DNA of 64,000 nt from Oopsacas minuta. Lineage: Eukaryota > Animalia > Porifera. The notes beneath the pieces were generated by a model. It saw only the letters and a program-made list of their open reading frames with translations. It had not been told where the DNA came from and searched no databases. The translations under genes and the position numbers were made by a program. Shown piece by piece: positions 1-62,530 of this stretch (position 1 is the first letter of the stretch; every line of letters starts with the position of its first letter). The stretch is taken from the NCBI GenBank assembly GCA_024704765.1, contig JAKMXF010000288.1, positions 248,001-312,000 of the forward strand, in the 5' to 3' direction.

Positions 1-665
1 CAGTAGATAACTTAGGGTCTATTATTACAGTAGATTGGAAAGAGAATCACAGGCTACAAGCATTCTCTCTTTTCTGAACAGAAATTGTATTTTAGTAATC
101 TAACTGCTCTGTACTATTTCTCTAATATACCTTATTATGCGACATATAGCCCAGCACGTAGATGCAACAGTAGCGGGCTTCGGGGGAACAAACCGAGCTT
201 TTGGCCTGGATTTCAAATCCTGGCCGCGGTCCGGCCCCAGGTATACCAGGAAGTCCCTGATTTCCCAACCTTTTTCACCTGTGGACCCAATATACCAATT
301 TTAACACTTTCTGTAGACCCCCTCCTATCAACTGCAATACGACTTAGCTGGTTCTAGTAGGTTAGGCGGGGACATGACAAGACAGTCACCAACTAAGATC
401 TTGTAATGCTTCATGGGTATGTTAAAGAAAAATTATTTGGGTCAATTCATATTTTGGGGATACACAGCTGGTCTGTCACGAAATTACTCCTTGAAACTTG
501 GTCGTGGGACCAAAATTATCATCGTAGAACCATTTTCCAGGAATTTCATCCCCCGACAATTTTCATAGAATTTTGAATTTTCCAGTAACAGGTATTTGAC
601 CCTGAACTAGGCTCATGACTCGGACACTTTTATAGCTCAATTTTAGTTATCATATCTAGAAATTG

Positions 666-1514
666 ATGAGTGACATTGAAGATATTAAAAGTATAAGTAA
701 CCCTCGCTTAACAAATAGAGATGGTAAACCTACTTGGTTGATTTGTGTTATAAAACGAGAATATTCTACATACACATCAACCCGCGTTCTTAATGGTAAC
801 CATGGAAACGAGGATTCTCCTTCACAGCATCCTGAAGCAAAGTTCTTTGACCTTTGGTGGAAAAATCCTAGAAAAATATTTCCTGATCTTCCTTTCAATG
901 AGATTGATAAAATACACTTTCATTTGATTTGGTATACATTGACATCACCCTGTAATAATTGTGTACAACTGATCAAAGGAAATCACCACTTATACAACAC
1001 TCTGAATATATTTACAGCCTCTGTTTATAAAAACTTGAAAGACAATTCGATAGAAGCGAGTAATCGCATTTATGAATTGAGACGTAAGGGTGTGGGAGTC
1101 GAGCCGATATCTGAGGGGGAATATCAACATTTTACGACAGGCCGCGTGGGTCATGAACTACCCCAACTTCCGTTCTTCAATCCTGAACAAGACTTCATTG
1201 ATCTTAGAATTTCATTTACCGCAGACACGACTATAACGACTGATAGAAATCCAAATTCCTTTGAGACAAGATTGTCACCAAGATACGATTCTATAAACCA
1301 ACATTTGGTACCGATCACTAATGAGAGAACTGTTTTAATAGAACCGTTTCCATACCAGGGATCTGCCCCTAGTTACCACCCACAGTTACCGAATACCTAC
1401 CCCTCAGAGGAAGATCATGAATCTGTGACTAACTACAAAGTTATTAAACGTGAGAGATCAAAGAGGAAATTGAAAAGGTTGAAAAGGAAAAATATTTTCA
1501 TTGAAGACAATTGA
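666..1514 (+). CDS. AID/APOBEC-like zinc-dependent cytidine deaminase with Pro-rich linker and basic C-terminal tail
   Basis: Single ORF with HPE (828-836) and SPCNNC (Cys at 951 and 960). Motifs run colinear with AID: TWLICVIKRE~TYLCYVVKRR, LIWYTLTSPC~VTWFTSWSPC, LNIFTASVY~LRIFTARLY, LRRKGVGVEPI~LHRAGVQIAIM. First ATG is at 666; an upstream exon cannot be excluded (ctag acceptor-like site at 656-659). Confidence 0.85.
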   Translation: MSDIEDIKSISNPRLTNRDGKPTWLICVIKREYSTYTSTRVLNGNHGNEDSPSQHPEAKFFDLWWKNPRKIFPDLPFNEIDKIHFHLIWYTLTSPCNNCVQLIKGNHHLYNTLNIFTASVYKNLKDNSIEASNRIYELRRKGVGVEPISEGEYQHFTTGRVGHELPQLPFFNPEQDFIDLRISFTADTTITTDRNPNSFETRLSPRYDSINQHLVPITNERTVLIEPFPYQGSAPSYHPQLPNTYPSEEDHESVTNYKVIKRERSKRKLKRLKRKNIFIEDN

Positions 1515-1660
1515 GCTTTTATTTTATGCTTTTTTGATTTTATTATTTGAATATTACACATAATGTGTTGTTTGTTTGTTGTTTGTTTGTTGTTTGTTGT
1601 TGTTGTTGTTGACATTCAATTTGCACAGAGACTTCTATTTCATTATATTAGAGATTATCT

Positions 1661-3734
1661 ATGGCAGAAAGAAATGATAGAAATGATAATATGCCAGGTG
1701 AGTATTTAATAATCACACCTACAGTCAACTCCCATTATATCTAACACGGTTATATCGAAGTGTGGAATTATACAACTAAGGTCACAAACCGTCAAAGTAA
1801 CACATATTCCATCAGTTATATCGAACTAATTATCACGGTCCCTTGAGCTCCGATTTTACGGAGCTAACTGTATTTTGCTGTTTCTTATCATACACGAATG
1901 TTTTGTCAAGAGTTACTTGATTTATGTACATCAAATATTCCTTGACTTCCCCCATTTCCCCTTATTTAAGATTTCAATAGATTCAAATTTAGAGGATCAT
2001 TTGGCCATTTTTGACCGGTTCTGTTCCCGGCCAAATGACTGGATCAACCGGCGAATCTATAAGCAGACTTTACTGTATATTTTTAGTGTCTAGTTAGCAG
2101 CTACCCCTTTGGATGTAACAACCTGTAACTTCTGTGTTTCAATGTTTATCCATAATGTAGGTCTAATAGAAGACACTGAATTAGACGGACTGTTAGATGA
2201 TGCCCTGCTAGATTATGACATACCCTCTAAACCTATACAAAAGGCTGAACAGCTACAATCTGTGCCACAAGCACCACATGGTGCTAACACCTTATTAACA
2301 GATGTCCTAGACCCTGCTGGCATGGAAGAAATGACCTCTATGATGCAGGGGATATTTGGAAAGGATTTGGTTAAGGAATATGAATTATTTTCTAAAGAAC
2401 TTGAACATAGAATCCCTGATATGTTTAATACAGAGGTAATGCTATTTCGAAAAATATTCATCTATTGTTAATACAATTTTGAGTCATATTATCGTCCATG
2501 GTCCCGGTTTGGGACCTCCGAATACTTGACACTTTGAGGATAGGACTGTTGTTCTTTGCAGAGACAGTTGTCCGCTTCTCAAAGTGTCCGTTTTAGGAGA
2601 TTCCATTAGCCTCCCTCAAATAATTATAAATACATTGGAGAGTATTTGCAAGAGTTTCCCTTGTTAATAAGCAAATTTGTTATTAGAGGAAATATTATTG
2701 CTAATGGGGAACATCACTGTAGGTAACTTGTGATATTATCTACGTAATAATCAGCTGATTGAGTTCCCGTTTTAACAAATTCCATTTGTTTCTAGGGAGA
2801 TACAATTGCTCCAGGATCTTCTCAACATATTCCCTCAGACAAACACAGGTCAAATATCTCTACAGAAGATACGATAAAAGATCTGAATAAGAATTTAGAG
2901 GATGCCAAATCAGCTGTTCCCCAAGGGCTAGAAGAGGGAGGGGAACACATGTTAGGGATGGTAAAGGATCTCATGGGTGATCTCCTCTCTCAGGAGGTGT
3001 TATATGAACCTATGAAAGAACTATGTGAACAATTTCCTAAGTATTTAGATGAAGAGGAATTGGGTAGTGAGGATAGGCAGAGGTGAGTTAATTAATGTGT
3101 TTTAAGATGTTCATTAGGGATCGGTTCTTCTGTAGCCATACGGTTTGAAGTGATTCAACCGGTTTTATGAAACTGTTCGGGTGTTCAGCAGTCAAATGGA
3201 TCAGGAGAAATCTTTATTTATCAAACTTCTTAACAATACAATTAACTCCCGAGATATCTAACACGGATATATCGAAGTAATTATCACGGTCACTTGAGCT
3301 GCGATGTAACGGGAGTTGTACTTAATCCAGGCTAAATTTCTGGATTTTTGATTATCCACAAATTTGATATTTCGCGTTCCCATTCATTGCGCTCGTACCT
3401 CAAACCTGAGGAATTGATATCAAATACCTCCCCTTGGGGTAGAGTTCCGTATCAATAAATACCTCCTTCAGTCCGGATTGGTTATATTTTACTAATGTTT
3501 AAACTCTCTAGATATTCACGTCAGTTTGTAGTTATGCAAGAAGTATGCAGAGAATACGAAACAGAATCAAAACAAGATTCACAACACTCAAAGCAAGATA
3601 GACAAAACAGGATATTAGGATTAGTACAAGAGTTACAAGAACTGGGTAATCCTCCTCCAGGACTAGTTAATGCTCCTGCTTTACCAGACTTATCACAGAT
3701 TCCACAGAATGATAATCTCTGTAATCAACAGTAA
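1661..3734 (+). CDS. PEX19: Peroxisomal biogenesis factor 19, 4 exons (1661-1697, 2161-2435, 2796-3082, 3512-3734)
   Basis: GT-AG junctions are phase-consistent. Motifs: N-terminal LDGLLDDALLDYD, LLSQEVLYEPMKELCEQFPKYL, LVQELQELGNPP, and a C-terminal CaaX CNQQ (compare yeast CKQQ). Confidence 0.93.
1720..1872. mobile_element. MITE family A, reference copy (about 150 bp; CAGT...ACTG termini, TA TSD; Tc1/mariner/pogo-like). Other copies at about 3237-3320, 5622-5783, 10721-10833, 14013-14300 (two), 19700-19760, 21862-22007, 34074-34192, 44200-44351, 52250-52400, 58306-58460, 62075-62215
   Basis: Recurring TACAGTCAACTCCCGTTATATCTAACACGGATATATCGAA ... GGTCCCTTGAGCTTCGATATAACGGGAGTTAACTGTA with terminal inverted repeats; no coding capacity. 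Confidence 0.85.
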
Positions 3735-5320: not shown

Positions 5321-6038
5321 ATGTGTCAATGGAATTTTAATAGTAATATTCACAGAGACATAACAAAGGTATTTGTTTTGTTTGTTAATCGATTTAATTA
5401 AGCGATTTGAATAATATCATTCTCTATTCGCGATTTTTATTCCATTTGCCTTATTTCCAATTAACCGAATACTGCCGGGGTGTGATTTTGTGAACTCAAA
5501 AAGGTGCTAGTAAGATTTTAGTGTTCTTTTTCATTATGAAAGTAACACTTCGGCCGTAATCGGTTTGATTTGGTAATAATATCGCTATCAATATTTTTCA
5601 GCGTCCTTAGAAAATCTCTCTATAATCAACTCCTGTTATATCTAACACGGATATATCGGAATACCCGCTTATATCGAGGTGTGAAATTTGTACAATATGG
5701 TCCCAAACCTTCAAAGTAACATATATTCCATCGGTTAAACCGAAGTAATTATCACGGTCCCTTGAGCTTCGATATAACGGTAGTCCTCATTTATCGTCAA
5801 TATTTTACTTGTCATGTTGGTTTAATCGGGACATTGTCCACCCCATATACGGTGGAACCTGCACAAACCGACACCTGTATACCGGAAGACCTCTATAATC
5901 CGAAATATGTTCCACAATATTCCCTAAAATCTCTGTTACTTAGGGATTCATATACGTACATTTAAACCTGATCCTATGGCTATGAATAAAATCAGTTTAA
6001 TAATCCGTACTCTTATCTATTCTACTAACACAAATAGC

Positions 6039-10632: not shown

Positions 10633-13600
10633 TCACGTTTTCAGTCTGTATTCTAATTCTTGTATTGCCTCCAGTCTATAGCAATAAGAAATGCATAAAA
10701 TCAGATATTAGAATTTAAATATTGACAACTCCAGTCACATCGAACACGGATAAATAGAAATATCCGCTCATATCAAAGTCTTAAATTCTACAAATATGGT
10801 CCCTTGAGCTTCGATATAACAGGAGTTAACTGTACAGATATTTCTTACCGTTTGGATGAATCTGATTCAATACCGCTAATCTTATTCATAAGATCTCTCA
10901 TTACTTGATTTTGTTCTCTATCTTTTGCTGCAGCTAGCAACCTAGATGTACAATTGGTATTAGTAAAGGTCGCTATAATTCTCCATAAGAAACTTTGCTC
11001 CAGGTTAGGCATTCAAATTGAAAACATTCCCAGTATTTTCAAAGTTTCTCTTGGTAAGACATGAAACTCCTGAATAATCTAGAGACCTGAGAGGTTTGGC
11101 AATATACTTACATTGGTGACAGTCTTTGTGATACAGAATTTAGTGATTTAACGAAAGGTTCTAAGGAAGATACGATAGTAGATAATTGTGTATTTTCATT
11201 TTGTAGTCTGTCTAGCTCTTGAAGATGACCTAATTAAAGTTGGGTAAGGCTACAACGAATTCAAATTTGGTACAAATTAATATGTTTACTCACCATAGAA
11301 TATTTCACGTTCATATGTTACTTTTGTAACAGTTTCTTCCCAATCCTAAAATATAGAATTATATTTGGTGTGAATCAAGGATTGTTCGAAGGGTATTGTA
11401 AGGTCAGGCATCTCCTAAAGTGCTCACAACATTCAAATGAGCTCAGGTCTCCCGATTTAAACTATCCTTGATCAACCCGGCTATATCTATATAGCCTGAC
11501 TGTGCAGGAAATGAATATTATTCATTTTGAAAATAGAAAATTCGAGTTTTACCGTGAATACATAATTAGTGCTACCAAAAGGTGTAACCAAATAATCTGG
11601 GCCTTTATAAGGAACATAATCCTCCCAGTTCTCCAACAGGTAATAGTAAACACACTTAAATACAGTGTACGCTGAATATAAGCACCATCATAAGGAAATC
11701 GGTTCTCATCTATTTCTGTATATTTATACCGGTTATAAGAATATGTATTGTTACTCCTAAGGATGTTCTTATAACTGGTATCCACTGTATGTATTACAAT
11801 ATTTTACAACCTGTATCATCAATTGATTAGCTCTAATCAGCTGATTTTGTGTAATTAGATTAGCATGGCAGAGACTTTAGATGTCACACAACTAACCGGA
11901 GGATCTCAGTTAGAAGAGACAGTATATCAAGATTGTAATGCTGATTTCCAGGGACAGGTCTGGGGGTGTTTATTCCCGTTAAGTGAACCTTTTGACCTCA
12001 TTGAACTGATTGAGGATAATTATTCGTTTGGGAGAGATGATGCGTGTTCTATTATTTTCAGTGAAAAACCTGATAGAATTGCTATACCGAATTACGGTGC
12101 TTTGAGTAAAAAACACTTTGAAATTTACCGATATTATCCTGACGGAAATAACTCTAATAACTACCTCACATACTTGACTGATAAATCAAGTAATGGGACA
12201 TTTGTTGACGGTATTAAAATCGGGAAAAATAAATCTCAAATTCTTAAGAATCATTCAACTATATCACTCAGTATGAAGAAGAACAAGTCTTATTTGTTTT
12301 ACGATAAAACTGAAAGTTTGAAAAGTGATATCCCTAATTTACCGATTGAGTTGACTTCCAAATACGCTCTCACGATTATTCTAGGCCGCGGCGCGTGTGG
12401 AGAAGTACGTCTCGCTTTCAGAATAGTCTCTGGCGAGCGGTTTGCAGTGAAAATAATAGAAATTAAACGTTTCCAGAGGGATAATTCTGCGATGAAGTCT
12501 GCTCTTGCCGAACTGAAAATTTTACAAAAACTTAACCATCCTGGAATTATTCAAATTTACGATTGTTTTCAAACGGAAACACATTTCTTTATAATTTTAG
12601 AATTTTTAGCTGGCGGAGAGCTCTTCGATAAAATCGTGAGATTAGGAAAATTCAGTGAAAACGAAGCAAAATTCACGTTTTACCAAATCCTCCTATCAAT
12701 GAGCTATTTACATTCACAAGGCATTACTCATAGAGATTTGAAACCGGAAAATATTTTATTATTATCAGAAGAGAAAGACTCGATAGTTAAAATCACAGAT
12801 TTCGGTTTGAGTCGTGTTGTTGGGGAGGGTAGTCTCATGAAGACACTCTGCGGTACACCTTCGTACTTAGCCCCTGAGGTTATCCTAAGCGCAGAGGTCA
12901 AAGGCTACGGTCCCAAATGCGATTGCTGGAGCCTCGGTGTGATACTTTTTATCATTCTAGCGGGATACCCCCCGTTCTCAACAGAAATCAAAGAACATAC
13001 CCTAACAGACCAAATTACGAGGGGGCTGTACTCATTTCCAAAGGAACAATGGTCACAAGTCTCCCCAGAAGCTATTGACATGATAAAATCTCTTCTAATA
13101 GTAAATCCGGATAATAGAATTTCAATAAAAGACTCATTAAGACATCCATGGTTAAATGATGAGAAAGTTAAAGAAAAGATTAGAAATATTATCGGTAAAG
13201 AATATATTTTTGATGATTTAGAAGCTTTGCCAAACGATCGGAAGCGAGGGGCAATTACAGAAAATTTTCCTGTGAAAAAGGTAAATATTGGTAGAGATGA
13301 ATCATTGATGGATATTTAGATTTTAGGAATTTGTATTATTGGCTAGTTTGAGTAAATTTATGTATATTTCAGTTCCTATTTACCTTTTCAAATGATGCTT
13401 TATTTGATTGTAGTATTTTTATCTGTTCTTGGATTACTATACCTTCATTCTTGCTATCTTCTTCTATTGATTGGGCCTGTGGAGTATATGAGGTAATTCT
13501 GAGATTATTAGGTATTTATTCAACCAAAGAAATGGTCTGTCTGACGCTCGGGTGGGTGGAATTATGCATACTTGCCAAATATCTCGGGGAGTTTATGACA

Positions 13601-16600
13601 TATACAGGGAAATATTCCCGAAAATTTCTGGGGGGTTTCTCAAATAATAGACTGGAATTGCTATTTGTGTATGTAATACTTAGAAATAAAAATTTGGGGA
13701 TAATCATTAATTTGTTTTAAAGACTGTTTCTGTCCAACAACCCACAACGACAAACAGAGGTAAGGGTGTTTGGAGGCTCAGAAAATCACGCCCAATTTTC
13801 TGATCGATTCTTCGTCGTTTTACGAATCAAACTTTCATCTAAGAATATGCAATAATTATTTTCTTACCAAGGATTCGTTAGGCTGACATTTCCTCTTAGT
13901 TAGATCGCCGTGTAATTCCTGTACTGTATCCTTCAAATGCATTAAGCGAGTGTTGATAGCCTAAAGACAGAATTATCATTGTTCAATACTCACTTAGGTC
14001 GAACTGGCTGAATACAGCCGACCCCCGTTATATCTAAGCTCAAGGGACCGTGATTATTACTTCAGTATAATCGATATGTTACGTTGACAGTTTGTGACAT
14101 ATTTGTACAATTTTAGACTTCGGTATATCCGTGTTAGACATAACGGGAGCTTTCTGTATATCGCAATGCCCGCCTATATCGAATTCTGAAATTCTACAAA
14201 TATGGTCTCAAACTGTCAAAGTAACATATTTTGATCAGTGATATCAAAATAATAATCACGAACCCTTGAGCTTCGATTTACTTAACGGCAGTTAGCTGTA
14301 TGCTATTTACTGTAGCACAACTTCTAATAATTCCGATAAAAATCAATTTCAAATTCTATTCCAAGAACTTCTCAGCTTATAAACTATTCTACCCGCGTCT
14401 TTAGCTCAACGATAATTACGCGATTTATAGGAATACTTTTGAAAGGTTTTATCTCGAGAATTATACGTTGAATTTGATAAAGAATATTTCCAGTAAAATA
14501 TAAATGAGATAGTTCATTCACGTGCAGTTCAGTAAAACTACTAATTTAGTCATTCAATTCAACATTCCATATTGTTATCAAATGTTCACATGATTTTACA
14601 GTCACGATAGCTAATTACAAGGCTCGTGAAAGGTGTCAAAATGGCCTGGTCCCGAAGTGACACTATTTGCGGGGTCACAACTCTTTTCCATTCGATAATT
14701 TATTCACCCTTTAAGTACCTTGTCTCAGGTGTCAAGTTTAATCACATTCCCTCGGATATAAAGAAATTGATTCGTAGAATTAAATACTGAATATCACTTC
14801 CATGAATCATTGACTATACTATTACTTTCTGTGCGTCTAGAATGATTTTGAGCTCGTACTTCGCGTCTTTTGTCATACCTCGTTAATACGGACACGATAA
14901 GTACGGATTTCTGGATAAGACGAACAGACAGTTACACAAAATCAGCTCCCACTATTGTTATTCAATTGGTATTACTCCGGTTAATACAAACTCTTGATAA
15001 TGCGAACACATTTGACCGTCCGTTAGTGTTTATATTAACGAAGTTCCATTGTCTATTTGAATTTTGCGGGACTCGGGTATTTCGCCTCCATTTGGATAGA
15101 AAATTTATTTGATAACTTACACGAATCTTCTCTGCATACGTGATCAACTCCTGCCTCGGCACTATATCTGGCAGACTGGATACATTGTTGCTATTAACAC
15201 TGTTATAGTTAGAGTATGTTACTCTGCTTTCACTAGTGCCTAGATTAGTAGCATATGCATATACTCCGGATGTAGGAGAGGTTGAATGAGGGAATAGAGA
15301 GGTGTTGATTAATGTCTGCTGGGTTGAATGTGGAGGCCAGTTTGATTGTAAGGTTGTGCTGTCTAAACTGTGAAAAATGGTATTTAACCTATCCAACTTG
15401 TTGTTTCAGCTCCACCGCCCGCATCATGTCAATACCATTTTATCAATGAAATTCAACTACACAATATATTTACTAACTAACAGGTGATTAGTAATGATTC
15501 TATCTACACAGATCTCCTTTGATACGGTTAATTAACATCAGCAGGTCCTCTCTAATTGTCCATTTCGGACCTCACTGTCCACTGGTAGACAATTAGAGAG
15601 GACCAACTGATGTTTAGAAGTAGAGTCATTGGAATACTTCCATGAATTGGACACTGTATTATGATAACATCATCAAATAATGAGATATGAGATGCCGCCC
15701 GCCCGTATGCTTAGATGTACATTATGTGAGCTGAAACAAATTTCTCATTAACAGGAGGGGAGTTATCTTACCAAATATTCTTTATTTCTGATTGTGTTTC
15801 TGCATCACACATATGATATTCATAGCCATACTCTCTCAGTACTGCGCTGATACATCTAATTGCATATAGGAATAATTATCGCATAATTATTACGAATTAT
15901 CTTCAAGCCCAGGGCAGTCGCTTGAGGGGGCCGGGGTTCGAAGCAGACCTCCCTGATGGTGTTATAGGACATGACATATGTTAGTAGAAATTCTTTAGCA
16001 TGTGTATTATATTCATAATTACCAACTCCTGATAACCCGTGATTCTAAAATTCTTACCTGGAATTCCTGTATGTATATTACAATTTTAACACCAAAAATG
16101 TTAATATTAGAAGTAAACAAACAAACAAACAAACAAACAACAAATGAATTCATTCCCGGATCTAGCATCAAGATGGTATCACTCAAATACAGTAATGGCA
16201 ATAAGGAAGGTAGCAGTAGGTGACAATCATTGTGCAATATTCTGTAAGGGTACAAATTGCAAATATGAGGACCCCAACTTTTGGCGTCCCGACCAAATGG
16301 CCCTTCAGGGGTCGTTTTCTCATTGGGTAACCGATGACGTCATGGCTATGTCACGACCTACAACACGCTTAATACGAGAATACGATTTTATTGGACAATT
16401 GATTGGACATGGTATTCGGTCTATTTTTTGTGTACAAAAACCGGGTGAACATTCTCATTGCGGACGTAATTTAGAGCCAAGCGGGTTTTCTTACAACCCC
16501 CAGGAGGTCATGGACGCTGGATTGTATTTTTATAACTTCGGCTGGGACGATTTTGGGGTGCCCTCAATGCCAATGGTGCTTGACATGGTACGTGTTGTGG

Positions 16601-19600: not shown

Positions 19601-22354
19601 ATTATTATAAAAGGAAAATTGTCTATACAGCAAACCTAGCAACAAAAATTGGATTTTGGAATGTTGAAATATATGCTGCTTTGATGGTTTGGGACCATAT
19701 TTGTACAATTTCCGGCTTCGATATAAGCGGGTATTCCGATATATCCGTGTTAGATATAATAGCTTTTTTTTATTATACATAACATGATAGCCCGCTCTAG
19801 ACTGATTTCCAAATCTCAAAATTCTAAATTACCACATATTTTCTTTTGCTTCTGTGTCCTCTTCTCGACTGCCACTATCTCATGCTTTGAAAACATCTTA
19901 GCTGAGTGTATAAGTCTACGACATTCGTTACACAGAGCTTGATCACATGTATTACAGAATATTGTAGCGTTTATCTAAAAGAATAATTTTAATAACACCC
20001 TTGGGGTAGTAAGATATGTTCTTATAACCAGTGTTCTTAGAAGTAACATTCACTGAACTCGAAATGCGAATCCAAAAGCTCCCAAAGTCTACATGAATTC
20101 CCAAATCTGACTAATATATATATTACTTACTTCTTCACAATTAGCACATTCCATAATCTCTGGTTTGTTGCTAGAGACAAGATATTGTAATAAGAGGTCT
20201 GGTCTGCTCTCAACAGCTGTAAAATCGTTAGTTGTTTGAGAATCATCTTTCAAATGGGTGTCTGAACTAAAAATATTAATTATTATACAAATACTATTAC
20301 AATGTTTGCAGGACACAAGCGTTGGCAATTATCTGTTCTCAGCTGGTGGGAACTTTTGGTGAATTTTTGGACCTCAGCGTTTTCCGCCTGATCCAATTGA
20401 AAATAGGGGCCCCAAATACCCAAGCCAGAAACCTCTCTACTTTGAGAGAATTATTCGTTCATGTTTGGCTGTTTCATGCGTGTCTTATTCAACAAAATTC
20501 GGGTCTCTTTTACTTTGAGCTAATTACTACGTAATGAACACCTTACACAAACACCTGTCTAATACACATAAACAACAAAAAATCCATTTTGGGTAAATTA
20601 CTGAATAACGTCAACAAGTTATCTCTCCGAACAGTTCACAGGAGTGTTAATCCATCACTTTTGTACTCTGCTATCACACCAGCTAGTATATTATTACGTT
20701 ATTGAAGCGCTGAAGCAGTATACTATTCAATACTTGTTGATTCTGTTTATTTGTAGAAACGGCTGGCTACAAAGATTATTGCAACGATAGATACAATCTA
20801 TTCCACTTAATCGAGACTATTTTCCTTAGGAAGGATTCAGACCTTAGTCATAGAAATATTATCCAAAATTTCGGTCAATCGTGAACTCCGTTTAACCAAC
20901 TTCAAAGGAACAGAAATTCGAAAGGATTTTATTTGGAAATTTTAAGAGGCTCCTTTGGGGATCGATGCATGGAAGTGGGAGGCTGTGGACAGTTTAATAG
21001 GATAAAGGGGTCGAGCTTACATTCCTCAATCCACATCTTGTCTACCACCATTTGAGGAGGATCAGCAAATAGAACTGGCATAATTCCAATTTTGAAGAAT
21101 TTTCCAGATAATTATACAATAGATTTCGAAGCGTTTATTTAAATTTATCTGTAATTATTAGAATTAATCTTTCCATGAATTTCACGAAGAATTACGCGAA
21201 AACTTAGTCTAAACATTGTCCCAATCTCTCAAAAATGTATTTTATCGCTATAATCACTTCACACACACACACACATTGATAACAGGTAATTTACTCAAGA
21301 GACAGTTGTATATAATAATTTGTAGAATTACAATTAAATTAGAAGCACCTCAAAGTGAGAACGGCTTCTACTGTGAAAATCAATTGAGACAAGGCTTAAG
21401 ACATTACTCCACTGATTTGAGTGATAATTATCACAATATGGTATGTTATTAATTGTTAGAATAATATGTCATATGGCCATGTGATTATTTCATGGACTTT
21501 TAAAGTCTCATAAACTCTTGTATTGAGTATTTATTTAGGAGATTGTACCATGGGTCATGGTTGACGGCCAGATTGGAGACATAGGCTGCTGCGTTTAAGC
21601 GGTATTTGGCTTGGTGGGACGATCTCAAAATTTGTATTACAGTCTAAGGGAGGGGGTCTATGGCGAAAAGGGTTGGGAACCAATGAATTTTAGTTAAAGT
21701 CAGTGATAATTCTGATTTTTTAAAGAGAGGAAAACCTGACAATCAATATTTGTAGAAATAGCAGTACGCTTCAGTGATAAATTCGAGTCATGGGTGGACA
21801 TATGTACTCAATAATCAATTCTCCTTAATTTAGAAAACTTTTGTACATGGATATCGTAATTAAATCCCGCTATATCAAACATGGATATATCGAAGTCTGT
21901 AATTGTACAAATAAGGCCCCAAAACCGTCAAAGTACATATATTTAATCGTTTATATCGAAGAATTATCAGGGTCCCTTCAGCTTCGATATAACAGGAGTT
22001 AACTGCGTGTATATATATTGTTAAAATAGTTAATGTAATTATAACTTACTTGCAAGAATAGCAAGCTACATCATTATCCAACACTCTGGTAGCAACGCAA
22101 TTAGAACAAAAGGAATGGAAACAATTCAATAAAATTGGATCTTCCAACTCATTTTTGCATATTCCACAGTCCAAATGTTGATCCAATTTTGACTCACCAC
22201 CTAATGAACTATGCGATCTCTTGCTTGGGCTAAATTCAAGCCCAAGTCCAATACTATTATAGTATATTGGCAACGAAGATGGTACAATGGTATGCCCATT
22301 TTTATAACTGCCACTAAAGTGCAAAAAATGTTGTCTGTCATCCAAATTTTCCAT
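10633..22354 (-). CDS. RNF207: RING / B-box / coiled-coil protein RNF207, about 16 exons
   Basis: Hand-spliced, phase-consistent exons give: RING CGIC...CFHSFCSNC; DLLLQYLVSS...CANCEE; FCNTCDQALCNECRRLIHSAKMFSKHEIV; LCINCFRDL; HLKDTVQELHGDLTK; FEKDWEETVTKVTYEREIFYGHLQELDRLQNEN; LEPFVKSLNSVSQRLSP. All run colinear with human RNF207. Stop TGA at 10633-10635. Confidence 0.88.
11865..13319 (+). CDS. CHEK2: Checkpoint kinase 2 (FHA + Ser/Thr kinase), intronless, nested antisense in RNF207 intron 11346-13383
   Basis: FHA domain (FGRD, SKKHF, DKSSNGTFVD); kinase motifs LGRGACGEV, HRDLKPEN, DFG, TLCGTPSYLAPE. Confidence 0.93.
   Translation: MAETLDVTQLTGGSQLEETVYQDCNADFQGQVWGCLFPLSEPFDLIELIEDNYSFGRDDACSIIFSEKPDRIAIPNYGALSKKHFEIYRYYPDGNNSNNYLTYLTDKSSNGTFVDGIKIGKNKSQILKNHSTISLSMKKNKSYLFYDKTESLKSDIPNLPIELTSKYALTIILGRGACGEVRLAFRIVSGERFAVKIIEIKRFQRDNSAMKSALAELKILQKLNHPGIIQIYDCFQTETHFFIILEFLAGGELFDKIVRLGKFSENEAKFTFYQILLSMSYLHSQGITHRDLKPENILLLSEEKDSIVKITDFGLSRVVGEGSLMKTLCGTPSYLAPEVILSAEVKGYGPKCDCWSLGVILFIILAGYPPFSTEIKEHTLTDQITRGLYSFPKEQWSQVSPEAIDMIKSLLIVNPDNRISIKDSLRHPWLNDEKVKEKIRNIIGKEYIFDDLEALPNDRKRGAITENFPVKKVNIGRDESLMDI
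16144..17586 (+). CDS. PTPDC1: Protein tyrosine phosphatase domain-containing 1, intronless, nested antisense in RNF207 intron 15856-17922
   Basis: SHWVTDDVMAMSRP, QKPGEHSHCG, GFSYNPQ, catalytic HCHAGLGRTG. Confidence 0.9.
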   Translation: MNSFPDLASRWYHSNTVMAIRKVAVGDNHCAIFCKGTNCKYEDPNFWRPDQMALQGSFSHWVTDDVMAMSRPTTRLIREYDFIGQLIGHGIRSIFCVQKPGEHSHCGRNLEPSGFSYNPQEVMDAGLYFYNFGWDDFGVPSMPMVLDMVRVVDFAISRGKVAIHCHAGLGRTGVLIACYIVYSRRLDGERAIEVVRTKRPGALQTAKQVELVLNYKQYMSKLWRVFAFCEEERFSLCEYLANQGELLHGIDWKKHKYIPKIVKFLCELLNKEFENFATNSDKRNFNPKHSNILSKSLQINSKELLLFEGEFNKTLDWGIIGELDSTTVWGLLLDWFYNLKYPILSQIEVLSIQRILAGKEGKPWEGLKNENAFNLLDYLTHFISTIQDNTDREHFISDISRVLVTVKGSVNDIQPPMPLATIPHPKMQSILPLCSANRDIKALTPRSMPKMEHYSEEMKTQIITDSFNSYLTNNNVNNTD

Positions 22355-23016
22355 TCAAATTTTGTATATTATTCAGCTGGACACAAGCATATATATACTG
22401 GCGAATAATTGAAGCCAATTTTCGTGTTGAATCATTTTTGGCTGATTAACAGTCAATGAAAGTACTATTCATTTGCTACCGGGAAGAATTCTATTTGCTT
22501 GGAAACACAAGTCACGAATTTCAATTGTTAAGATTCCATATAAGGACTATGCCTTTCTGTTATCGAATTATATTTTGGGGAATTTATTTTATCGCTTGTT
22601 TTTCAGATTAAACGTTAGATATTTTTAGCTGACACGAATTCTCTAATTTATGCGATTACTTTCAATTTATCGTAAGGCATCGAAAAGTATTCTTAACTTT
22701 ATGTGTGATTAAAGTTGGAGCTTCAAATTTACTGAATAGACTGCCGGGGGAATTCTTGTAATTGGAACTCCAAATGGACAAGCTACAAACCTTCAAACTT
22801 CATTTCAAAATGACGAATTAATATTTCAATATTTATCCAATAAAGTGAACCCCACAAACGGGGCACTTCTGGAAACGGAGTGAAAAATACAAACTGCGAA
22901 TTCCTAGTCCATACGAATGAACCCCTACAAGCGGGGTAACGGGGCAGCATTTTCGCCGTCCCTGACACCTCGTTAATAAAATTTAATAATTATTTTTATT
23001 CTTGTTTACTAGCGAA

Positions 23017-24690
23017 ATGCTCCAAACAAACAAATTAGCTCAATTTTACCAAATAATAATATTCAGAAGACTATTATCCATCGCAAAAATAAACCAAGAG
23101 ATAAAGAAAAGTTCTAAACTAAATTTAATCGAAACACATAAGCTACTACGGCCTCCTATAGTATCAGTTATGGGTCACGTGGATCATGGAAAAACAACTC
23201 TCTTAGATTCCCTAAGAAATACAAATGTAGCTGAGAATGAACCTGGATTAATTACGCAACACGTCTCTTCGTTTGTTGTAAATTTCGAAGGCCGTGACGT
23301 AACCTTTATTGACACACCAGGACACGCGGCTTTCGCAGGGATTCGAGGGAGAGGCGCTAAAATTAATGACATCACCATTCTTGTTGTGGACACAAATGAA
23401 GGTATAAAACCTCAAACTCAAGAAGTAATCGATTTGATCTTGAAATATGAAATTCCAACTATTGTAGCGCTAAATAAAATCGATAGGAAAACATCAAAAT
23501 TGGAAGCTACGGAGGAGGAATTGGTGGATGCAGGAATTGAACTGGAAAACTACGGCGGTAGTGTTATGTCCGTTCCTATATCAGGACTGAAACGCTTGAA
23601 TTTAGATAAGCTTGTTCGTTGCATTCTCAAATTGGCCGACCGATTGGAGCTGCATTCGTTGGAGGATTTTCAGTTGAAAGGCAGGATTTTAGAAGTCAAT
23701 ACACAATTCAGTCGAGGGACTGTCGCGACTGTTCTTGTCGAGAGAGGGTTGTTAAAACTCGGTAGCATACTGCAATCGGATCTAACTTGGTGTAAGGTAA
23801 AGCAATTCCAGGCTACAGAGGGTTTTGATCATTCCTTGTTTGTAAACGGAGGAAAACCTGGGTACCCCTTCAGAGTAATCGGGTGGAAGAGCCCCCCAAC
23901 ACCCGGGGCGATTTTCAAAGAGATATCATCCGAAAAGATGGCTAAACTTTCAATTAAACAACTCCAAACATTGGAAAAAACAGAAAAATCATTGAATGTA
24001 AAAGATTCAAGCGAGAAAGAGAAAATTACGCGAAAATTCGCCGACGATTCTAAAACACTATATTTAGTCGTGAAGGCGGATACCGCGGGGTCGCTCGAAG
24101 CTCTCCTGAACCTCTTAACAAGTGGGAAACTCGAGGAAGTTAAAATAGAAATAGTCCGTTCAGAAGTTGGTGCGATACTCCAATCAGATTTGATATACGC
24201 AGACAGCATACGAGCTCATGTAATTGGGTTTAATGTCAAGCTCGATGAAGACTTGAAGGTGTTACAGAAAAACTTAAAAATTCCCGTATTCGTTCATAAT
24301 ATAGTTTATGGAATTGTTGATTATGTAAAGAATGAGCTTGAGGATTTACTGGAACCTGTTTACGAGGAAAGAATTGTCGGTGAAGCGAATATTTTGAAAC
24401 TATTCAAAATTCCGAATAATCTACAAGCTTCTGGAGGTATTGTCATATCGGGCCGAATCGAGAGATCAGGGAAATTCCGAGTTTTTCGTAGAAATGATTT
24501 GATTTTCGAAGGGAAAGTGAAAGTCTTACAGCACAAAAAAACAGTGATTCAGAAAATTGAGAAAGGAAATGAGTTTGGAGTATCTTTTACAGATTTTAAT
24601 AACTGTTTGGAAGATGACAGAATATTTTGTTACCAAAACTTTCCTGTCAGAAAAAGTTTGGTTTGGGACATAGCTGGAGAATCAAATTGA
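23017..24690 (+). CDS. MTIF2: Mitochondrial translation initiation factor 2, paralogue A (no IF2_N region; near-complete domain IV)
   Basis: GHVDHGKT, DTPGH and NKID G-motifs; VKADTAGSLEAL; domain IV. Presequence-like N-terminus from ATG 23017. Confidence 0.88.
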   Translation: MLQTNKLAQFYQIIIFRRLLSIAKINQEIKKSSKLNLIETHKLLRPPIVSVMGHVDHGKTTLLDSLRNTNVAENEPGLITQHVSSFVVNFEGRDVTFIDTPGHAAFAGIRGRGAKINDITILVVDTNEGIKPQTQEVIDLILKYEIPTIVALNKIDRKTSKLEATEEELVDAGIELENYGGSVMSVPISGLKRLNLDKLVRCILKLADRLELHSLEDFQLKGRILEVNTQFSRGTVATVLVERGLLKLGSILQSDLTWCKVKQFQATEGFDHSLFVNGGKPGYPFRVIGWKSPPTPGAIFKEISSEKMAKLSIKQLQTLEKTEKSLNVKDSSEKEKITRKFADDSKTLYLVVKADTAGSLEALLNLLTSGKLEEVKIEIVRSEVGAILQSDLIYADSIRAHVIGFNVKLDEDLKVLQKNLKIPVFVHNIVYGIVDYVKNELEDLLEPVYEERIVGEANILKLFKIPNNLQASGGIVISGRIERSGKFRVFRRNDLIFEGKVKVLQHKKTVIQKIEKGNEFGVSFTDFNNCLEDDRIFCYQNFPVRKSLVWDIAGESN

Positions 24691-25178: not shown

Positions 25179-26996
25179 ATGTATAGAAAAGCATTACAAA
25201 TAATTCCACAGAAAATCTCGAATATAGTCCAATACAATTCAATGCACAGTCATGTCATTAACGAACCAACTGACCTATATAGCCAGCCTTACGTCAGAGT
25301 ATTACATTTAGCTGAAAAGCTACAAGTATCGCCTAAGAAGGTGTTAAGTATCCTCATAAATACCGAAATCCGTGAATACAACTTAGCTACAAAAATATTC
25401 CATTCTGAGATCAAATTGGTCACAGATGAGTTAGGAATTGGCCAATCAATTCCTTCCGTTTTGATTACAAGACGGCCTCCTATAGTATCAGTTATGGGTC
25501 ACGTGGATCATGGAAAAACAACTCTCTTAGATTCCCTAAGAAATACAAATGTAGCTGAGAATGAACCTGGATTAATTACACAACACGTCTCTTCGTTTGT
25601 TGTAAAATTCGAAGGTCGTGACGTAACCTTTATTGACACACCAGGACACGCGGCTTTCGCAGGGATTCGAGGGAGAGGCGCTAAAATTAATGACATTACC
25701 ATTCTTGTTGTGGACTGTTGCGAGGGTGTACAGCCGCAGACGAAAGAAGTGATTCGCTTAATTAAAGAATTCAGAATTCCGAGTGTTGTAGCTTTGAATA
25801 AAATCGACAAGGACGAAGCGAATATCGAAAAAACTGAGCAAGAACTTCAAGAAAATGGTTTGGAATTAATGAACATTCCTTCCGTACAAATCTCAGCACT
25901 GAGAGGTGATAATTTGGATATATTAATGAGATTAGTAGTGACAGAATCGGATGGGGTGAATTTAGATACCGATTTGGGTGGAAATCCGTTTGGATTTATT
26001 CTTGAAACTAGTAAGGCTAGGTATTTAGGGGGACTAGCTACTATCTTACCTCTGAGGGGTATCGCGAGGCTCGGCACAATTATTTCTTCTGGGCGGACTT
26101 TATGTCGAATCAAGGCTATACTTCTACCGTCTGGAGAGAAGGTGAAGGAGATAGGACCTGGGTATCCGTGTACGATCGCTGGTTGGAGGCAGGGCCTCCC
26201 TAATCCGGGATTAAAGTTCATTAGCGCGGAGAAACTTGTGGATGCAAAAAGAATGGCAAAAGTACCGGCAAATTTATGGGTGTTAGAAAAGAACAAACGG
26301 AAACGACAGATATTAAAAAAACTGTTTTTAGCCGAAAAATCGCGATCAGCTGTTCAAGAGTCTGTTGAAATTAGAGGCAACAAAAATACGTTATGTGTAC
26401 TTCTAAAATCGGACACGGAAGGCTCGAAAGAAGCACTTGAGACCATTTTAACATCAACTTCACCAGAATATCTCAAAATACAAGTTTTCACTTCCACCAT
26501 TGGGGACATAAATCTAACAGATGTGCGACACGCGAAGGCACTCAAAGCACACATTCTTGGGTTCAATGTTGGTATCCATAGAGACGCGGTATCTTTGTTA
26601 ACATCCAGTGCTGTACCATATTTCACACATAATGTTGTTTATCAAATAATCAATTACGTCAGTGAACAGTTGGACAAAATGCTGCCCCCTGACTATGTTG
26701 AGGAGCGAATCGGAATGGCTGATATAATTTCCTTCCCTTCCGGCCTGGATTTAAGGGTTCCTCTCGAGTGTGAGGTCACTGAAGGCAATTTTGATGAAAA
26801 TTATAGTTTTCGAGTAATTTCCAAAAGTGGAGAAATAAAGTACGATGGAAGATCGCAAGATTTCGAGCTTAAAAACGGAAGAAATTTCAATGTACGGTTC
26901 CCCTTTTTAGCAGATTATGAGGCGACAGATAAAATTGAATGTTATGACCTTGTGTTACGCAAACGCAAACTATTCTGGCAAGTTAATACAGAGTAA
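25179..26996 (+). CDS. MTIF2: Mitochondrial translation initiation factor 2, paralogue B (IF2_N-like region present; shortened domain IV)
   Basis: GHVDHGKT, DTPGH, NKID; LKSDTEGSKEAL; N-terminal VLHLAEKLQVSPKKVLSIL resembles IF2_N. Confidence 0.85.
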   Translation: MYRKALQIIPQKISNIVQYNSMHSHVINEPTDLYSQPYVRVLHLAEKLQVSPKKVLSILINTEIREYNLATKIFHSEIKLVTDELGIGQSIPSVLITRRPPIVSVMGHVDHGKTTLLDSLRNTNVAENEPGLITQHVSSFVVKFEGRDVTFIDTPGHAAFAGIRGRGAKINDITILVVDCCEGVQPQTKEVIRLIKEFRIPSVVALNKIDKDEANIEKTEQELQENGLELMNIPSVQISALRGDNLDILMRLVVTESDGVNLDTDLGGNPFGFILETSKARYLGGLATILPLRGIARLGTIISSGRTLCRIKAILLPSGEKVKEIGPGYPCTIAGWRQGLPNPGLKFISAEKLVDAKRMAKVPANLWVLEKNKRKRQILKKLFLAEKSRSAVQESVEIRGNKNTLCVLLKSDTEGSKEALETILTSTSPEYLKIQVFTSTIGDINLTDVRHAKALKAHILGFNVGIHRDAVSLLTSSAVPYFTHNVVYQIINYVSEQLDKMLPPDYVEERIGMADIISFPSGLDLRVPLECEVTEGNFDENYSFRVISKSGEIKYDGRSQDFELKNGRNFNVRFPFLADYEATDKIECYDLVLRKRKLFWQVNTE

Positions 26997-33873: not shown

Positions 33874-34220
33874 ATTGTGTTATATTATTTGTAACTATAA
33901 TTTGTGTATGGTGTATTCTACTAAATGAAGAGGGTAATCCTCCGCTTGAAATATTGTATATAATAATCTCTGATATGCATACTTGGTAACTGTCGCGGTT
34001 TTGCCGGGACGTGCCGATTATCCATACATATATAGGCATTTGTTGAGTGTTTAGGTCGTCGAAAATGCCGACAATACAGTCAACTTCCGTTACATCTAAC
34101 GAAGTAACATATATCCCATCGGTTATATGAACTCCGCTTATATCGAAGAAATTATCGCGGTCCCTTAAGCTTCGATGTAACTGGAGTTAACCTTATTAAT
34201 ATTAAATATTTCTAGAGTCC

Positions 34221-41985: not shown

Positions 41986-42252
41986 TTTTCTTTATTTCCT
42001 TATTTACAAGTTTGTTCGTTTGTTTGTTTGCTTGTTTTTATTGTAATTTATTTTCCATATTTTAATAATTATAATAACTGTATTTTGGGTTGAAACTTTG
42101 AATTAATAAAATATATTATTTTGAGTGAAACGATGGAATTTTCGAATAAATACGTGTCAACCATGAAATCTGACAAATTCGGACATGTTGGTTCTTAGCG
42201 TTTTGTCCCGATTTAAGGGAATTCCATATTAACGGAACGGTCACTACGAAGC

Positions 42253-55855: not shown

Positions 55856-56030
55856 TTGTTTATTTCTTTATTTGTTTACTTGTTTATTCATTCGTTTGCT
55901 TGCTTGTTTGTTTGTTTGTTTGTCTGCATGTTTGTATGTTTGTATGTTTGTTTATTCATTCGTTGGCTTGCTTGTTTGTCTGTCTGTTTGTTTGGAGTTT
56001 ACTGCCTGATTATTTGTTTGTGTTTATTGA
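55856..56030. repeat. Degenerate (TTTG/TTTA)n microsatellite right after the LIPT2 stop. Shorter (TTTG)n/(TTG)n tracts at 1563-1610, 16118-16143, 50945-50972
   Basis: Directly visible tandem tetramer runs; they explain the spurious CLFV-repeat ORFs. Confidence 0.9.

Positions 56031-59573: not shown

Positions 59574-62530
<2,957 letters not shown>

What the first reader, a model, noticed from the sequence alone, without database searches (positions are those of the whole stretch)
666..1514. Canonical-looking AID/APOBEC-type cytidine deaminase in an apparently non-vertebrate compact genome
Seen: HPE and SPCxxC zinc ligands with the catalytic Glu intact, plus colinear AID-like segments (N-terminal N-x-R, TWLICVIKR, LNIFTASVY loop-7 region, LRRKGVGVEP). 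Differences from AID: the SWSPC Trp is replaced (TLTSPC), there is an insertion between HxE and PCxxC, and there is an extra tail of about 125 aa. Established: AID/APOBEC-like deaminases occur sporadically in invertebrates and are linked to antiviral or anti-retroelement defence. Inference: an active polynucleotide C-to-U editor of a possibly undescribed clade, in a MITE-rich genome.
Basis: partly seen in the sequence, partly recalled or inferred. Interest (0 to 1): 0.82.

Follow-up and report, generated by a model that had tools for sequence, protein, structure and literature searches.

The report
Glass-sponge APOBEC-like cytosine deaminase gene
This is a real, intact, single-exon gene for an AID/APOBEC-type cytosine deaminase in what is almost certainly a glass sponge; it belongs to a small sponge-only branch with no named relatives, which places a non-secreted enzyme of this mutator family near the base of the animal tree.

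Summary
Window 666-1514 (+) is a 282-aa ORF with H55-P-E57 and S-P-C96-N-N-C99. It passes Pfam's thresholds for APOBEC_N, NAD1, APOBEC2 and SNAD4 and hits no free-nucleotide or tRNA deaminase family. Its predicted fold matches only APOBEC3/AID structures.

The host is not a vertebrate. Synteny and a transcript from Aphrocallistes beatrix point to a hexactinellid (glass) sponge with a dense, intron-poor genome.

A profile search of 1.84 billion representative proteins found very few relatives:
- four syntenic single-copy orthologues (60-67% identical, dN/dS about 0.1 or less);
- a 25-kb tandem array of about 12 paralogues in an Aphrocallistes-like sponge, where recent pairs give dN/dS 0.4-0.8 and one copy is transcribed;
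- more distantly, a primate APOBEC3.

The protein has no signal peptide, unlike the described sponge clade SNAD4. It carries a conserved 97-aa tail ending in an NLS-like basic cluster.

Best reading: an intracellular, probably nuclear, zinc-dependent cytosine deaminase acting on single-stranded DNA or RNA. It is slow-evolving here and expanded in a sister lineage. Activity is inferred, not shown. Two substrate-contacting residues of vertebrate enzymes are replaced (the Trp of SWSPC, and the Arg ending strand 4).

Verdict: new member of a known kind, moderate interest.

The parts
666..1514 (+). Complete single-exon CDS (282 codons plus stop) of the AID/APOBEC-like deaminase
   Evidence: ORF list and sequence. 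An in-frame stop lies at 657-659. The N-terminus MSDxED is conserved in all five orthologues. Pfam APOBEC_N scores 45.9 bits.
666..1220 (+). Deaminase domain, aa 1-185. Predicted order: b1 24-31, b2 37-43, a2 56-66, b3 85-93, a3 97-105, b4 112-119, a4 128-140, b5 144-147, a5 150-157
   Evidence: AlphaFold2 model from a 16-sequence alignment: pLDDT 66, pTM 0.67, with the core aa 20-160 mostly at 75-90. Foldseek top 50 hits are all APOBEC3/AID. The domain is 70-78% identical among orthologues.
828..836 (+). H55-P56-E57: zinc-ligand His and catalytic Glu at the start of helix 2
   Evidence: Read directly from the sequence. Invariant in the five orthologues. The paralogues have HAE, HVE or HCE.
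861..917 (+). Family-specific extension of about 10-12 residues between helix 2 and strand 3 (KNPRKIFPDLPFNEIDKIH)
   Evidence: Alignment with APOBEC3C-like domains. The segment is nearly invariant among the orthologues.
945..962 (+). S94-P95-C96-N-N-C99: the two zinc-ligand cysteines (PCxxC). The Trp of vertebrate SWSPC is Thr93 here
   Evidence: Sequence. P95, C96 and C99 are invariant across the family and the APOBEC3 domains.
1011..1028 (+). End of strand 4 and start of loop 7 (F116-T-A-S119-V-Y121). The aromatic Y121 is kept; S119 replaces the Arg of vertebrate enzymes
   Evidence: HMMER alignments to APOBEC3G place TIFVARLY opposite NIFTASVY. The position is Y or F in all orthologues.
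1221..1511 (+). C-terminal tail, aa 186-282, with no Pfam match. It is conserved only among the orthologues (45-48% identity) and contains the invariant motif YHPQLPNT(Y/F)P (nt 1374-1403)
   Evidence: dN/dS in the tail is about 0.05-0.45.
1446..1490 (+). Basic cluster K261-K275 (KRERSKRKLKRLKRK), NLS-like
   Evidence: KLKRLKR is invariant in the five orthologues. The Aphrocallistes paralogues carry basic clusters near their C-termini too: KKKKEK in P0126 and RLRKRK in P0127. Nuclear import itself is inferred, not tested.

Best explanation
The gene encodes an intracellular, probably nuclear, zinc-dependent cytosine deaminase of the AID/APOBEC (AAD) superfamily from a glass sponge.

Proposed mechanism:
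- His55, Cys96 and Cys99 hold the zinc, and Glu57 shuttles the proton.
- A cytosine flipped out of a single-stranded DNA or RNA enters a pocket narrowed by the loop-7 aromatic residue Tyr121 and is converted to uracil.
- The C-terminal basic cluster directs the enzyme to the nucleus.

In the window's lineage the gene is single-copy, fixed in one syntenic position and slow-evolving. That argues for a conserved, 'institutionalised' target rather than a fast arms race. In an Aphrocallistes-like glass sponge the same family has expanded into a tandem array of about 12 copies with relaxed or diversifying evolution, the pattern expected of defence against retroelements or viruses.

Shown here: family membership, fold, intact catalytic motifs, purifying selection, synteny, transcription of one paralogue, and absence of a signal peptide.

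Inferred: catalytic activity, substrate (DNA or RNA), nuclear localisation and biological role.

The confidence of 0.6 is for the whole statement, activity included. Membership of the AAD superfamily alone I put at about 0.95.
For: - Pfam: APOBEC_N 45.9, NAD1 41.0, APOBEC2 37.9 and SNAD4 37.7 bits, all above their cut-offs, with no non-AAD deaminase family. The same pattern holds in eight of the nine relatives scanned; the 127-aa fragment P0129 gives only a sub-threshold SNAD4 hit.
- A PDB profile search hits only APOBEC3G/C/F/B/H, APOBEC2, AID and APOBEC1.
- The AlphaFold2 core has the APOBEC strand/helix order. Foldseek's top 50 are all APOBEC3/AID at probability 1.00.
- H55, E57, P95, C96 and C99 are invariant or nearly so across the family. 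Position 121 is Y or F in all orthologues.
- Five orthologues sit in the same gene order, RSN1/CSC1-like, deaminase, Pex19, Rad60-SLD, SpoU, MRPL27, cNMP.
- Among the orthologues dS is saturated and domain dN is 0.06-0.19. The only unsaturated pair gives dN/dS 0.075-0.096.
- The domain is as conserved as the neighbouring SpoU methyltransferase.
- In the Aphrocallistes array, every copy that includes the N-terminal half keeps HxE and PCxxC. Recent pairs give dN/dS 0.36-0.83.
- One copy is 98% identical to, and colinear with, a contig from the A. beatrix metatranscriptome SRR29297749.
- There is no hydrophobic N-terminal segment, and an in-frame stop lies upstream of the ATG in both the window and the transcript.
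- Sea-urchin and brachiopod AADs are mutators in E. coli (PMC5956068), so invertebrate AADs can be active.
Against: - No activity data exist for any member of this clade.
- The Trp of SWSPC is Thr/Ser here and Arg in the paralogues. The basic residue ending strand 4 (R128 of APOBEC3A, described as strongly conserved in PMC5889660) is Ser119. Both line the substrate site in vertebrate enzymes.
- The H-P-E variant is also the form aligned in the N-terminal domain of APOBEC3G. From general knowledge, that domain is non-catalytic.
- APOBEC2 and APOBEC4 keep the catalytic motifs yet show no mutator activity (PMC5956068 discussion).
- There is no transcript evidence for the window's own gene.
- The structural model is of medium confidence only, and its alignment included three APOBEC3 domains, which may bias it towards that fold.
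- Nine copies of a local MITE show no clear C-to-T hypermutation.
Confidence: 0.6

Rival explanations
1. A conserved AAD-fold protein that binds nucleic acid but does little or no deamination, like APOBEC2, APOBEC4 or the N-terminal domains of APOBEC3s. It would serve a regulatory or structural role in the nucleus.
For: It is single-copy, syntenic and slow-evolving. This is the pattern Krishnan et al. assign to clades with conserved functions such as APOBEC2/4 (PMC5889660). Substitutions occur at the SWSPC Trp and at the Arg ending strand 4. The HPE variant is shared with the APOBEC3G N-terminal domain.
Against: All four zinc/catalytic residues and the loop-7 aromatic residue are strictly kept over saturated synonymous divergence, and also across the fast-evolving paralogue array. 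That is most simply explained by selection for catalysis. AID itself is also single-copy and conserved, yet active.
Confidence: 0.25
2. A member of the secreted sponge clade SNAD4, acting outside the cell or in the secretory pathway.
For: The host is a sponge. The Pfam SNAD4 model scores 37.7 bits (cut-off 27) and covers positions 4-123 of 130. The family shows a lineage-specific expansion in one sponge, as described for SNAD4 (PMC5889660).
Against: None of nine members has a signal peptide: the highest 8-residue Kyte-Doolittle mean in the first 22 residues is 1.6 or less. In-frame stops lie just upstream of the start codon in the window and in the transcript. A C-terminal NLS-like basic cluster is present. 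SNAD4 is never the best-scoring model among the full-length members.
Confidence: 0.07
3. A free-nucleotide or tRNA deaminase (CDA, dCMP deaminase, ADAT/TadA type) that only resembles APOBEC.
For: It shares the superfamily fold and the H(x)E / PCxxC motifs.
Against: No Pfam hit to any such family even at E up to 10. In the PDB profile search the only non-AAD deaminase is CDADC1, at E = 0.49. The loop-7 aromatic residue typical of AADs is present.
Confidence: 0.02
4. A chance ORF or decaying pseudogene.
For: None beyond the lack of expression data for this exact copy.
Against: The 282-codon ORF is intact in five species with saturated dS and low dN, with a conserved start and end.
Confidence: 0.01

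Closest known systems
Vertebrate AID / APOBEC3 (core vertebrate AADs; PDB e.g. 6wma, 3vm8, 5sww, 5w0r)
   Same: Same fold and element order. Same H-x-E and P-C-x2-C zinc site. Aromatic residue in loop 7. Colinear N-terminal R, TWL(C) strand 1 and LxIF(T/V)A strand 4. Like AID, it is single-copy and conserved, with a basic nuclear-import-like signal.
   Different: About 20% identity. The Trp of SWSPC and the Arg ending strand 4 are replaced. The helix 2-strand 3 loop is about 10-12 residues longer. A 97-aa tail has no counterpart. The host is a sponge. The best vertebrate hit in the whole-library profile search reaches only E = 4.5e-5.
SNAD4, the secreted AAD clade reported only from sponges (Krishnan et al. 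2018, PMC5889660; Pfam PF18750)
   Same: Sponge host. The Pfam model is matched above threshold. Tandem lineage-specific expansion occurs in one species.
   Different: No signal peptide, an NLS-like tail, SNAD4 not the top model among the full-length members, and single-copy slow evolution in the window's lineage.
Sea-urchin SpAIDL and brachiopod LaAIDL deaminases (Liu et al. 2018, PMC5956068) and the classical invertebrate AAD clades of Krishnan et al.
   Same: Intracellular invertebrate AADs with intact motifs. Some of them are proven mutators in E. coli and are linked to immunity. Multigene families are common.
   Different: Those come from bilaterians and cnidarians. None surfaced as a relative at E <= 1e-3 in the profile search. 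No activity or induction data exist for the sponge clade.
APOBEC2
   Same: Single conserved copy, catalytic motifs kept, Pfam APOBEC2 model above threshold (37.9 bits), and PDB 2nyt/2rpz hit at about 1e-6.
   Different: APOBEC2 is vertebrate-specific. No specific sequence affinity beyond that to the other AAD models.

Membership tests
AID/APOBEC-like deaminases (AAD superfamily) | Match to AAD profile models above curated thresholds, with no better match to other deaminase families | tested here: met
   APOBEC_N 45.9 bits (cut-off 25), NAD1 41.0 (27), APOBEC2 37.9 (26.8), SNAD4 37.7 (27). No non-AAD deaminase family at E <= 10. The full-length relatives show the same pattern.
AID/APOBEC-like deaminases (AAD superfamily) | Zinc/catalytic motifs H-x-E and P-C-x(2)-C | tested here: met
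   H55-P-E57 and P95-C96-N-N-C99. Invariant across orthologues, and kept by every paralogue that includes that region.
AID/APOBEC-like deaminases (AAD superfamily) | Deaminase fold with APOBEC-type element order; closest structures are AADs | tested here: met
   Model pLDDT 66, pTM 0.67, order b1-b2-a2-b3-a3-b4-a4-b5-a5. Foldseek top 50 are all APOBEC3/AID, probability 1.0, TM 0.45-0.55. Caveat: the alignment used for folding included three APOBEC3 domains.
AID/APOBEC-like deaminases (AAD superfamily) | Aromatic residue in loop 7 that restricts the pocket to a pyrimidine (Y130 of APOBEC3A; PMC5889660) | tested here: met
   Y121 aligns with the Tyr of ARLY in APOBEC3G. It is Y or F in all five orthologues.
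AID/APOBEC-like deaminases (AAD superfamily) | Basic residue at the end of strand 4 (R128 of APOBEC3A), strongly conserved in core vertebrate AADs | tested here: not met
   Ser119 is invariant in the orthologues and Ser/Ala in the paralogues. This is a feature of the core vertebrate clade, not of all AADs.
AID/APOBEC-like deaminases (AAD superfamily) | Cytosine-to-uracil deamination in single-stranded polynucleotides | not testable with these tools
   Needs a mutator or oligonucleotide assay.
Core vertebrate AAD clade (AID, APOBEC1/2/3, NAD1, NAD2) | Clear best match to one clade-specific model, the SWSPC motif, and a vertebrate host | tested here: not met
   Scores for NAD1, APOBEC2 and SNAD4 lie within about 4 bits of each other. 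Trp is replaced by Thr93. The host is a sponge.
SNAD4 (secreted sponge AADs) | N-terminal signal peptide | tested here: not met
   No hydrophobic segment in the first 22 residues of nine members. In-frame stops lie just upstream of the ATG in the window and in the A. beatrix transcript. No dedicated signal-peptide predictor was available.
SNAD4 (secreted sponge AADs) | Pfam PF18750 above its gathering score | tested here: met
   37.7 bits against 27, covering model positions 4-123 of 130. It is never the best-scoring model among the full-length members.
SNAD4 (secreted sponge AADs) | Phylogenetic grouping with published SNAD4 sequences | not testable with these tools
   No SNAD4 sequences could be retrieved.
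Free-nucleotide / tRNA deaminases (CDA, dCMP deaminase, TadA/ADAT) | Match to dCMP_cyt_deam or related models; small residue in place of the loop-7 aromatic | tested here: not met
   No such Pfam hit. CDADC1 reaches only E = 0.49 in the PDB profile search. Y121 is present.

The most novel reading that the evidence does not exclude
This could be the poriferan representative of the classical (intracellular) AADs. That would be a slow-evolving, nuclear, single-copy deaminase kept at one locus across deeply diverged glass sponges. It would mean that a programmed, 'institutionalised' DNA- or RNA-editing function, analogous to AID, already existed at the base of animals alongside the defence-type expansions seen in Aphrocallistes.
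Probability: 0.2. Interest if true: 0.75.

Novelty: new member of a known kind. Interest (0 to 1): 0.5.

Why it matters
AID/APOBEC-like deaminases are the mutators behind antibody diversification and retrovirus restriction. Their deep history rests on sparse invertebrate data. For sponges, only a secreted clade (SNAD4) has been described, and Krishnan et al. inferred a split between secreted and classical intracellular forms at the base of Metazoa.

A non-secreted clade with an NLS-like tail in glass sponges would fill that gap, or else show a secondary loss of secretion. The clade has two contrasting regimes: a single slow-evolving syntenic copy in one lineage, and a transcribed 12-copy tandem array in another.

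It also offers small, divergent deaminase domains (about 185 aa) with altered substrate-loop residues. These can be tested directly for activity and sequence preference.

Tried and rejected
- **Rotifer or placozoan host.** I suspected this first because of the dense, intron-poor genes. It was rejected: DPH6 and Grb2 give no close named hit from those groups, and the trail to Aphrocallistes settled a hexactinellid affinity.
- **First structure prediction.** With five orthologues and the full length it was useless (pLDDT 35.6). It was repeated on the domain with 16 sequences.
- **Paralogues nearby.** tblastn found none in the window or in the four 17-kb orthologous loci.
- **RNA genes.** An Rfam scan and a tRNA scan of the window found nothing.
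- **NCBIfam.** It gave only a chance hit.
- **Viral or other metagenomic relatives.** None in IMG/VR or in JGI metagenome contigs.
- **Deaminase footprint in the local MITE family.** C/G-to-T/A changes run at 0.071 per site against 0.042 for the reverse transitions, and the excess is concentrated at CpG. A CC-context excess (14 of 114) is too small to interpret, so the test is inconclusive.
- **Clade assignment by Pfam scores.** This was inconclusive.
- **Order of events in the family tree.** The tree does not resolve whether the Aphrocallistes expansion post-dates the split from the window's lineage.

Full report
**1. The observation**

Window 663..1514 (+) is an uninterrupted ORF. The first ATG is at 666, an in-frame TAG lies at 657-659, and the product is 282 aa.
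- N12-P-R14
- TWLICVIKR
- H55-P-E57 (nt 828-836)
- TLTSPC96NNC99 (nt 945-962)
- LNIFTASVY
- LRRKGVGVEP

The three stated differences from AID are also real. Thr stands in place of the Trp of SWSPC. The segment between HxE and PCxxC is about 10-12 residues longer than in APOBEC3 domains (alignment A4). There is a long C-terminal extension.

Nothing in the window looks human.

**2. Family**

Against Pfam the protein hits only AID/APOBEC-clan models. APOBEC_N scores 45.9 bits (cut-off 25), NAD1 41.0, APOBEC2 37.9, SNAD4 37.7 and NAD2 27.8. No cytidine/dCMP/tRNA deaminase family appears even at E <= 10.

A profile of the family against all PDB sequences finds APOBEC3G (5.9e-11), APOBEC3C, APOBEC2, APOBEC3F, AID, APOBEC3B/H and APOBEC1. 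The only other deaminase is CDADC1, at E = 0.49.

A first AlphaFold2 run on five orthologues failed (pLDDT 35.6). A second run on residues 1-190 with 16 sequences gave pLDDT 66 and pTM 0.67, with most of the core (aa 20-160) at 75-90. The element order is b1-b2-a2-b3-a3-b4-a4-b5-a5. Foldseek's best 50 PDB matches are all APOBEC3 or AID chains at probability 1.00. The caveat is that the alignment included three APOBEC3 domains.

**3. Relatives**

The word-index search found only four relatives, 60-67% identical over the full length including the tail. Each comes from a different ENA assembly, on contigs of 0.27-1.25 Mb. All lie in the same gene order: RSN1/CSC1-like, deaminase, Pex19, Rad60-SLD, SpoU methylase, MRPL27, cNMP-binding protein. 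The window continues in that order.

The clade was still open, and the claim of an undescribed clade rests on the absence of relatives. I therefore ran the exhaustive profile search with the domain alignment A2. Among 1.84 billion representatives only 12 reached E <= 1e-3:
- the query cluster;
- five proteins that all sit on one contig (ERZ20067936 ptg000172l);
- a primate APOBEC3C-like protein at E = 4.5e-5;
- five repeat proteins with 6-9 short matched stretches each, which I treat as spurious.

No member carries a name in any source. IMG/VR and JGI metagenome contigs hold no relative.

**4. Whose genome**

The window is metazoan. It encodes Grb2, a tensin-like protein, a Chk2-like protein, an Ig/TSP1 matrix protein, TMEM206 and a COMMD protein. 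It is extremely gene-dense with mostly single-exon genes, and GC is about 35-38% apart from one 44% block.

- Grb2's best named match is the sponge Ephydatia muelleri at 69%.
- DPH6 is 51-64% identical to unnamed ENA proteins and at most about 40% identical, over most of its length, to any named animal.
- A cluster mate of paralogue P0126 lies on a 912-nt Logan contig from run SRR29297749. [quoted passage not shown]
- That transcript is 98% identical to, and colinear with, the genomic copy in ERZ20067936. ERZ20067936 is therefore an Aphrocallistes-like hexactinellid, and the copy is transcribed. This assumes no DNA carry-over in the RNA library.
- Another contig of ERZ20067936 carries Grb2 (two copies), LipB, DPH6, MFS and TPT in the same order as window 49.8-62 kb.
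- Published glass-sponge genomes are small and dense, have many single-exon genes and extensive microsynteny, and sponge scaffolds have GC below 40% (PMC10282587; PMC10280926).

I conclude, with about 85% confidence, that the window comes from a hexactinellid sponge distant from Aphrocallistes. Neither genome paper mentions APOBEC or deaminases.

**5. Two evolutionary regimes**

Among the five orthologues synonymous sites are saturated, while dN in the domain is 0.06-0.19. The one unsaturated pair gives dN/dS 0.075 for the domain and 0.096 overall. The domain is 70-78% identical between species. That is at least as conserved as the neighbouring SpoU methyltransferase (66-76%) and more conserved than Rad60-SLD (50-60%). 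No paralogue lies in the window or in the orthologous loci.

In the Aphrocallistes-like genome the family forms a same-strand tandem array of about 12 copies over 25 kb (contig positions 91,162-116,129):
- four copies are full-length;
- three are interrupted by 0.6-1.1 kb (intron or insertion, not resolved);
- two are frameshifted;
- the rest are truncated.

Every copy that includes the relevant region keeps HxE and PCxxC. Recent duplicate pairs give dN/dS 0.36-0.83, and older pairs have dN 0.4-0.67. The array is flanked by a TRIM-like NHL/B-box gene, a class-C GPCR and an AIG1/septin-type GTPase.

In a maximum-likelihood tree the five orthologues form a clade (support 97/98) with short branches. 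The paralogues are long-branched and unresolved.

**6. Architecture and residues**

There is no signal peptide. The most hydrophobic 8-residue window in the first 22 residues averages 1.6 or less on the Kyte-Doolittle scale in nine members. In-frame stops precede the start codon in the window and in the transcript.

The tail (aa 186-282) has no Pfam match. It is conserved only among the orthologues, with an invariant YHPQLPNT(Y/F)P motif and an invariant KLKRLKR basic cluster. The paralogues also end in basic clusters. I read these as nuclear localisation signals, which is an inference.

In the catalytic core, H55, E57, C96 and C99 are kept. The loop-7 aromatic residue (Y121, Y or F across the orthologues) aligns with the Tyr of APOBEC3G's ARLY. 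According to PMC5889660 this residue limits the pocket to pyrimidines.

An Asn that is nearly invariant in the family (N43) lies at the start of loop 3, within two alignment columns of the APOBEC3 Asn.

Two residues differ from vertebrate enzymes. The Trp of SWSPC is Thr/Ser here and Arg in the paralogues. The basic residue ending strand 4 is Ser119. The H-P-E variant also appears in the N-terminal domain of APOBEC3G, which from general knowledge is non-catalytic.

**7. Interpretation**

The best-supported reading is an intracellular, probably nuclear, zinc-dependent cytosine deaminase acting on single-stranded DNA or RNA. Strict retention of the catalytic residues, over saturated divergence and across a fast-evolving array, argues for catalysis. 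Sea-urchin and brachiopod AADs show that invertebrate members can be mutators (PMC5956068).

In the window's lineage the slow evolution and fixed position fit Krishnan et al.'s category of conserved single-copy AADs. The Aphrocallistes array fits their arms-race category.

The main rival, at about 25%, is an APOBEC2-like protein that binds nucleic acid without mutating it. The other rivals are poorly supported or contradicted: a secreted SNAD4 member, a free-nucleotide or tRNA deaminase, and a pseudogene.

**8. Comparison with the known**

AADs in sponges are known only as SNAD4, described as secreted and expanded within species. This clade passes the SNAD4 Pfam threshold, but it scores no better there than on vertebrate models, lacks the signal peptide and carries an NLS-like tail.

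Two possibilities remain open: a SNAD4 offshoot that lost secretion, or the missing poriferan classical AAD. The question could not be settled because no SNAD4 or invertebrate AAD sequences were retrievable here.

I file it as a new member (a new sponge clade) of a known kind, with moderate interest.

**9. Side test**

The window holds 16 hits to a MITE-like element of about 150 nt with terminal inverted repeats of roughly 20 nt. One copy (1722-1871) lies just 3' of the deaminase gene. Nine full-length copies show only a modest C/G-to-T/A excess, concentrated at CpG, so there is no clear deaminase footprint.

Noticed in passing
window 1722-1871, 5625-5785, 14014-14299 (two copies head to head), 21859-22006, 44201-44350, 52250-52418, 58307-58457, 62075-62214, plus fragments at 3239-3318, 10726-10834, 19663-19760, 34100-34191, 56705-56764: A dispersed MITE-like element of about 150 nt with terminal inverted repeats of roughly 20 nt (core CCGTTATATC). 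It gives 16 nhmmer hits in 64 kb, mostly intergenic, and one copy lies 200 nt downstream of the deaminase stop codon. The substitution spectrum of nine copies shows a CpG-biased transition excess but no clear hypermutation.
   Followed up: partly
window 23002-24690 and 25179-26996 (+): Two tandem genes for IF-2-type translation initiation GTPases (562 and 605 aa). They share a 282-nt stretch at 93% identity (23148-23429 and 25472-25753), so this is a recent tandem duplication or gene conversion.
   Followed up: no
window 27750-31877 (-): A 1375-aa single-exon ORF encoding an Ig I-set/TSP1 (ADAMTS-like/papilin-like) matrix protein. It coincides with the only GC-rich block of the window (44% against about 36%).
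   Followed up: no
L005/L006/L008 (ERZ20067936 ptg000172l, contig positions 91,162-116,129): A tandem array of about 12 deaminase paralogues in an Aphrocallistes-like glass sponge. It includes a roughly 9.3-kb segmental duplication (the copies at 100,805 and 110,154 are nearly identical) and three copies interrupted at about residue 143-146 by 0.6-1.1 kb. It is flanked by a TRIM-like NHL/B-box gene and an AIG1/septin-type GTPase gene.
   Followed up: partly
L001 1996-7171: In one orthologous locus the upstream RSN1/CSC1-like channel gene appears split into two ORFs (553 and 243 aa), with a 543-aa MULE transposase ORF between them. In L002-L004 the same gene is one ORF of about 767 aa.
   Followed up: no
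L009 1-1620 (ERZ20067936 ptg000228l), compared with window 61330-61965: Grb2 is tandemly duplicated in the Aphrocallistes-like genome but single in the window. The block TPT-MFS-DPH6-LipB-Grb2 is syntenic between the two sponges despite only 51% DPH6 identity.
   Followed up: partly
window 1560-1610, 41971-42054, 55839-56002: Intergenic TTTG/TTGT-rich microsatellite-like tracts recur just downstream of genes. One follows the deaminase 3' end directly.
   Followed up: no
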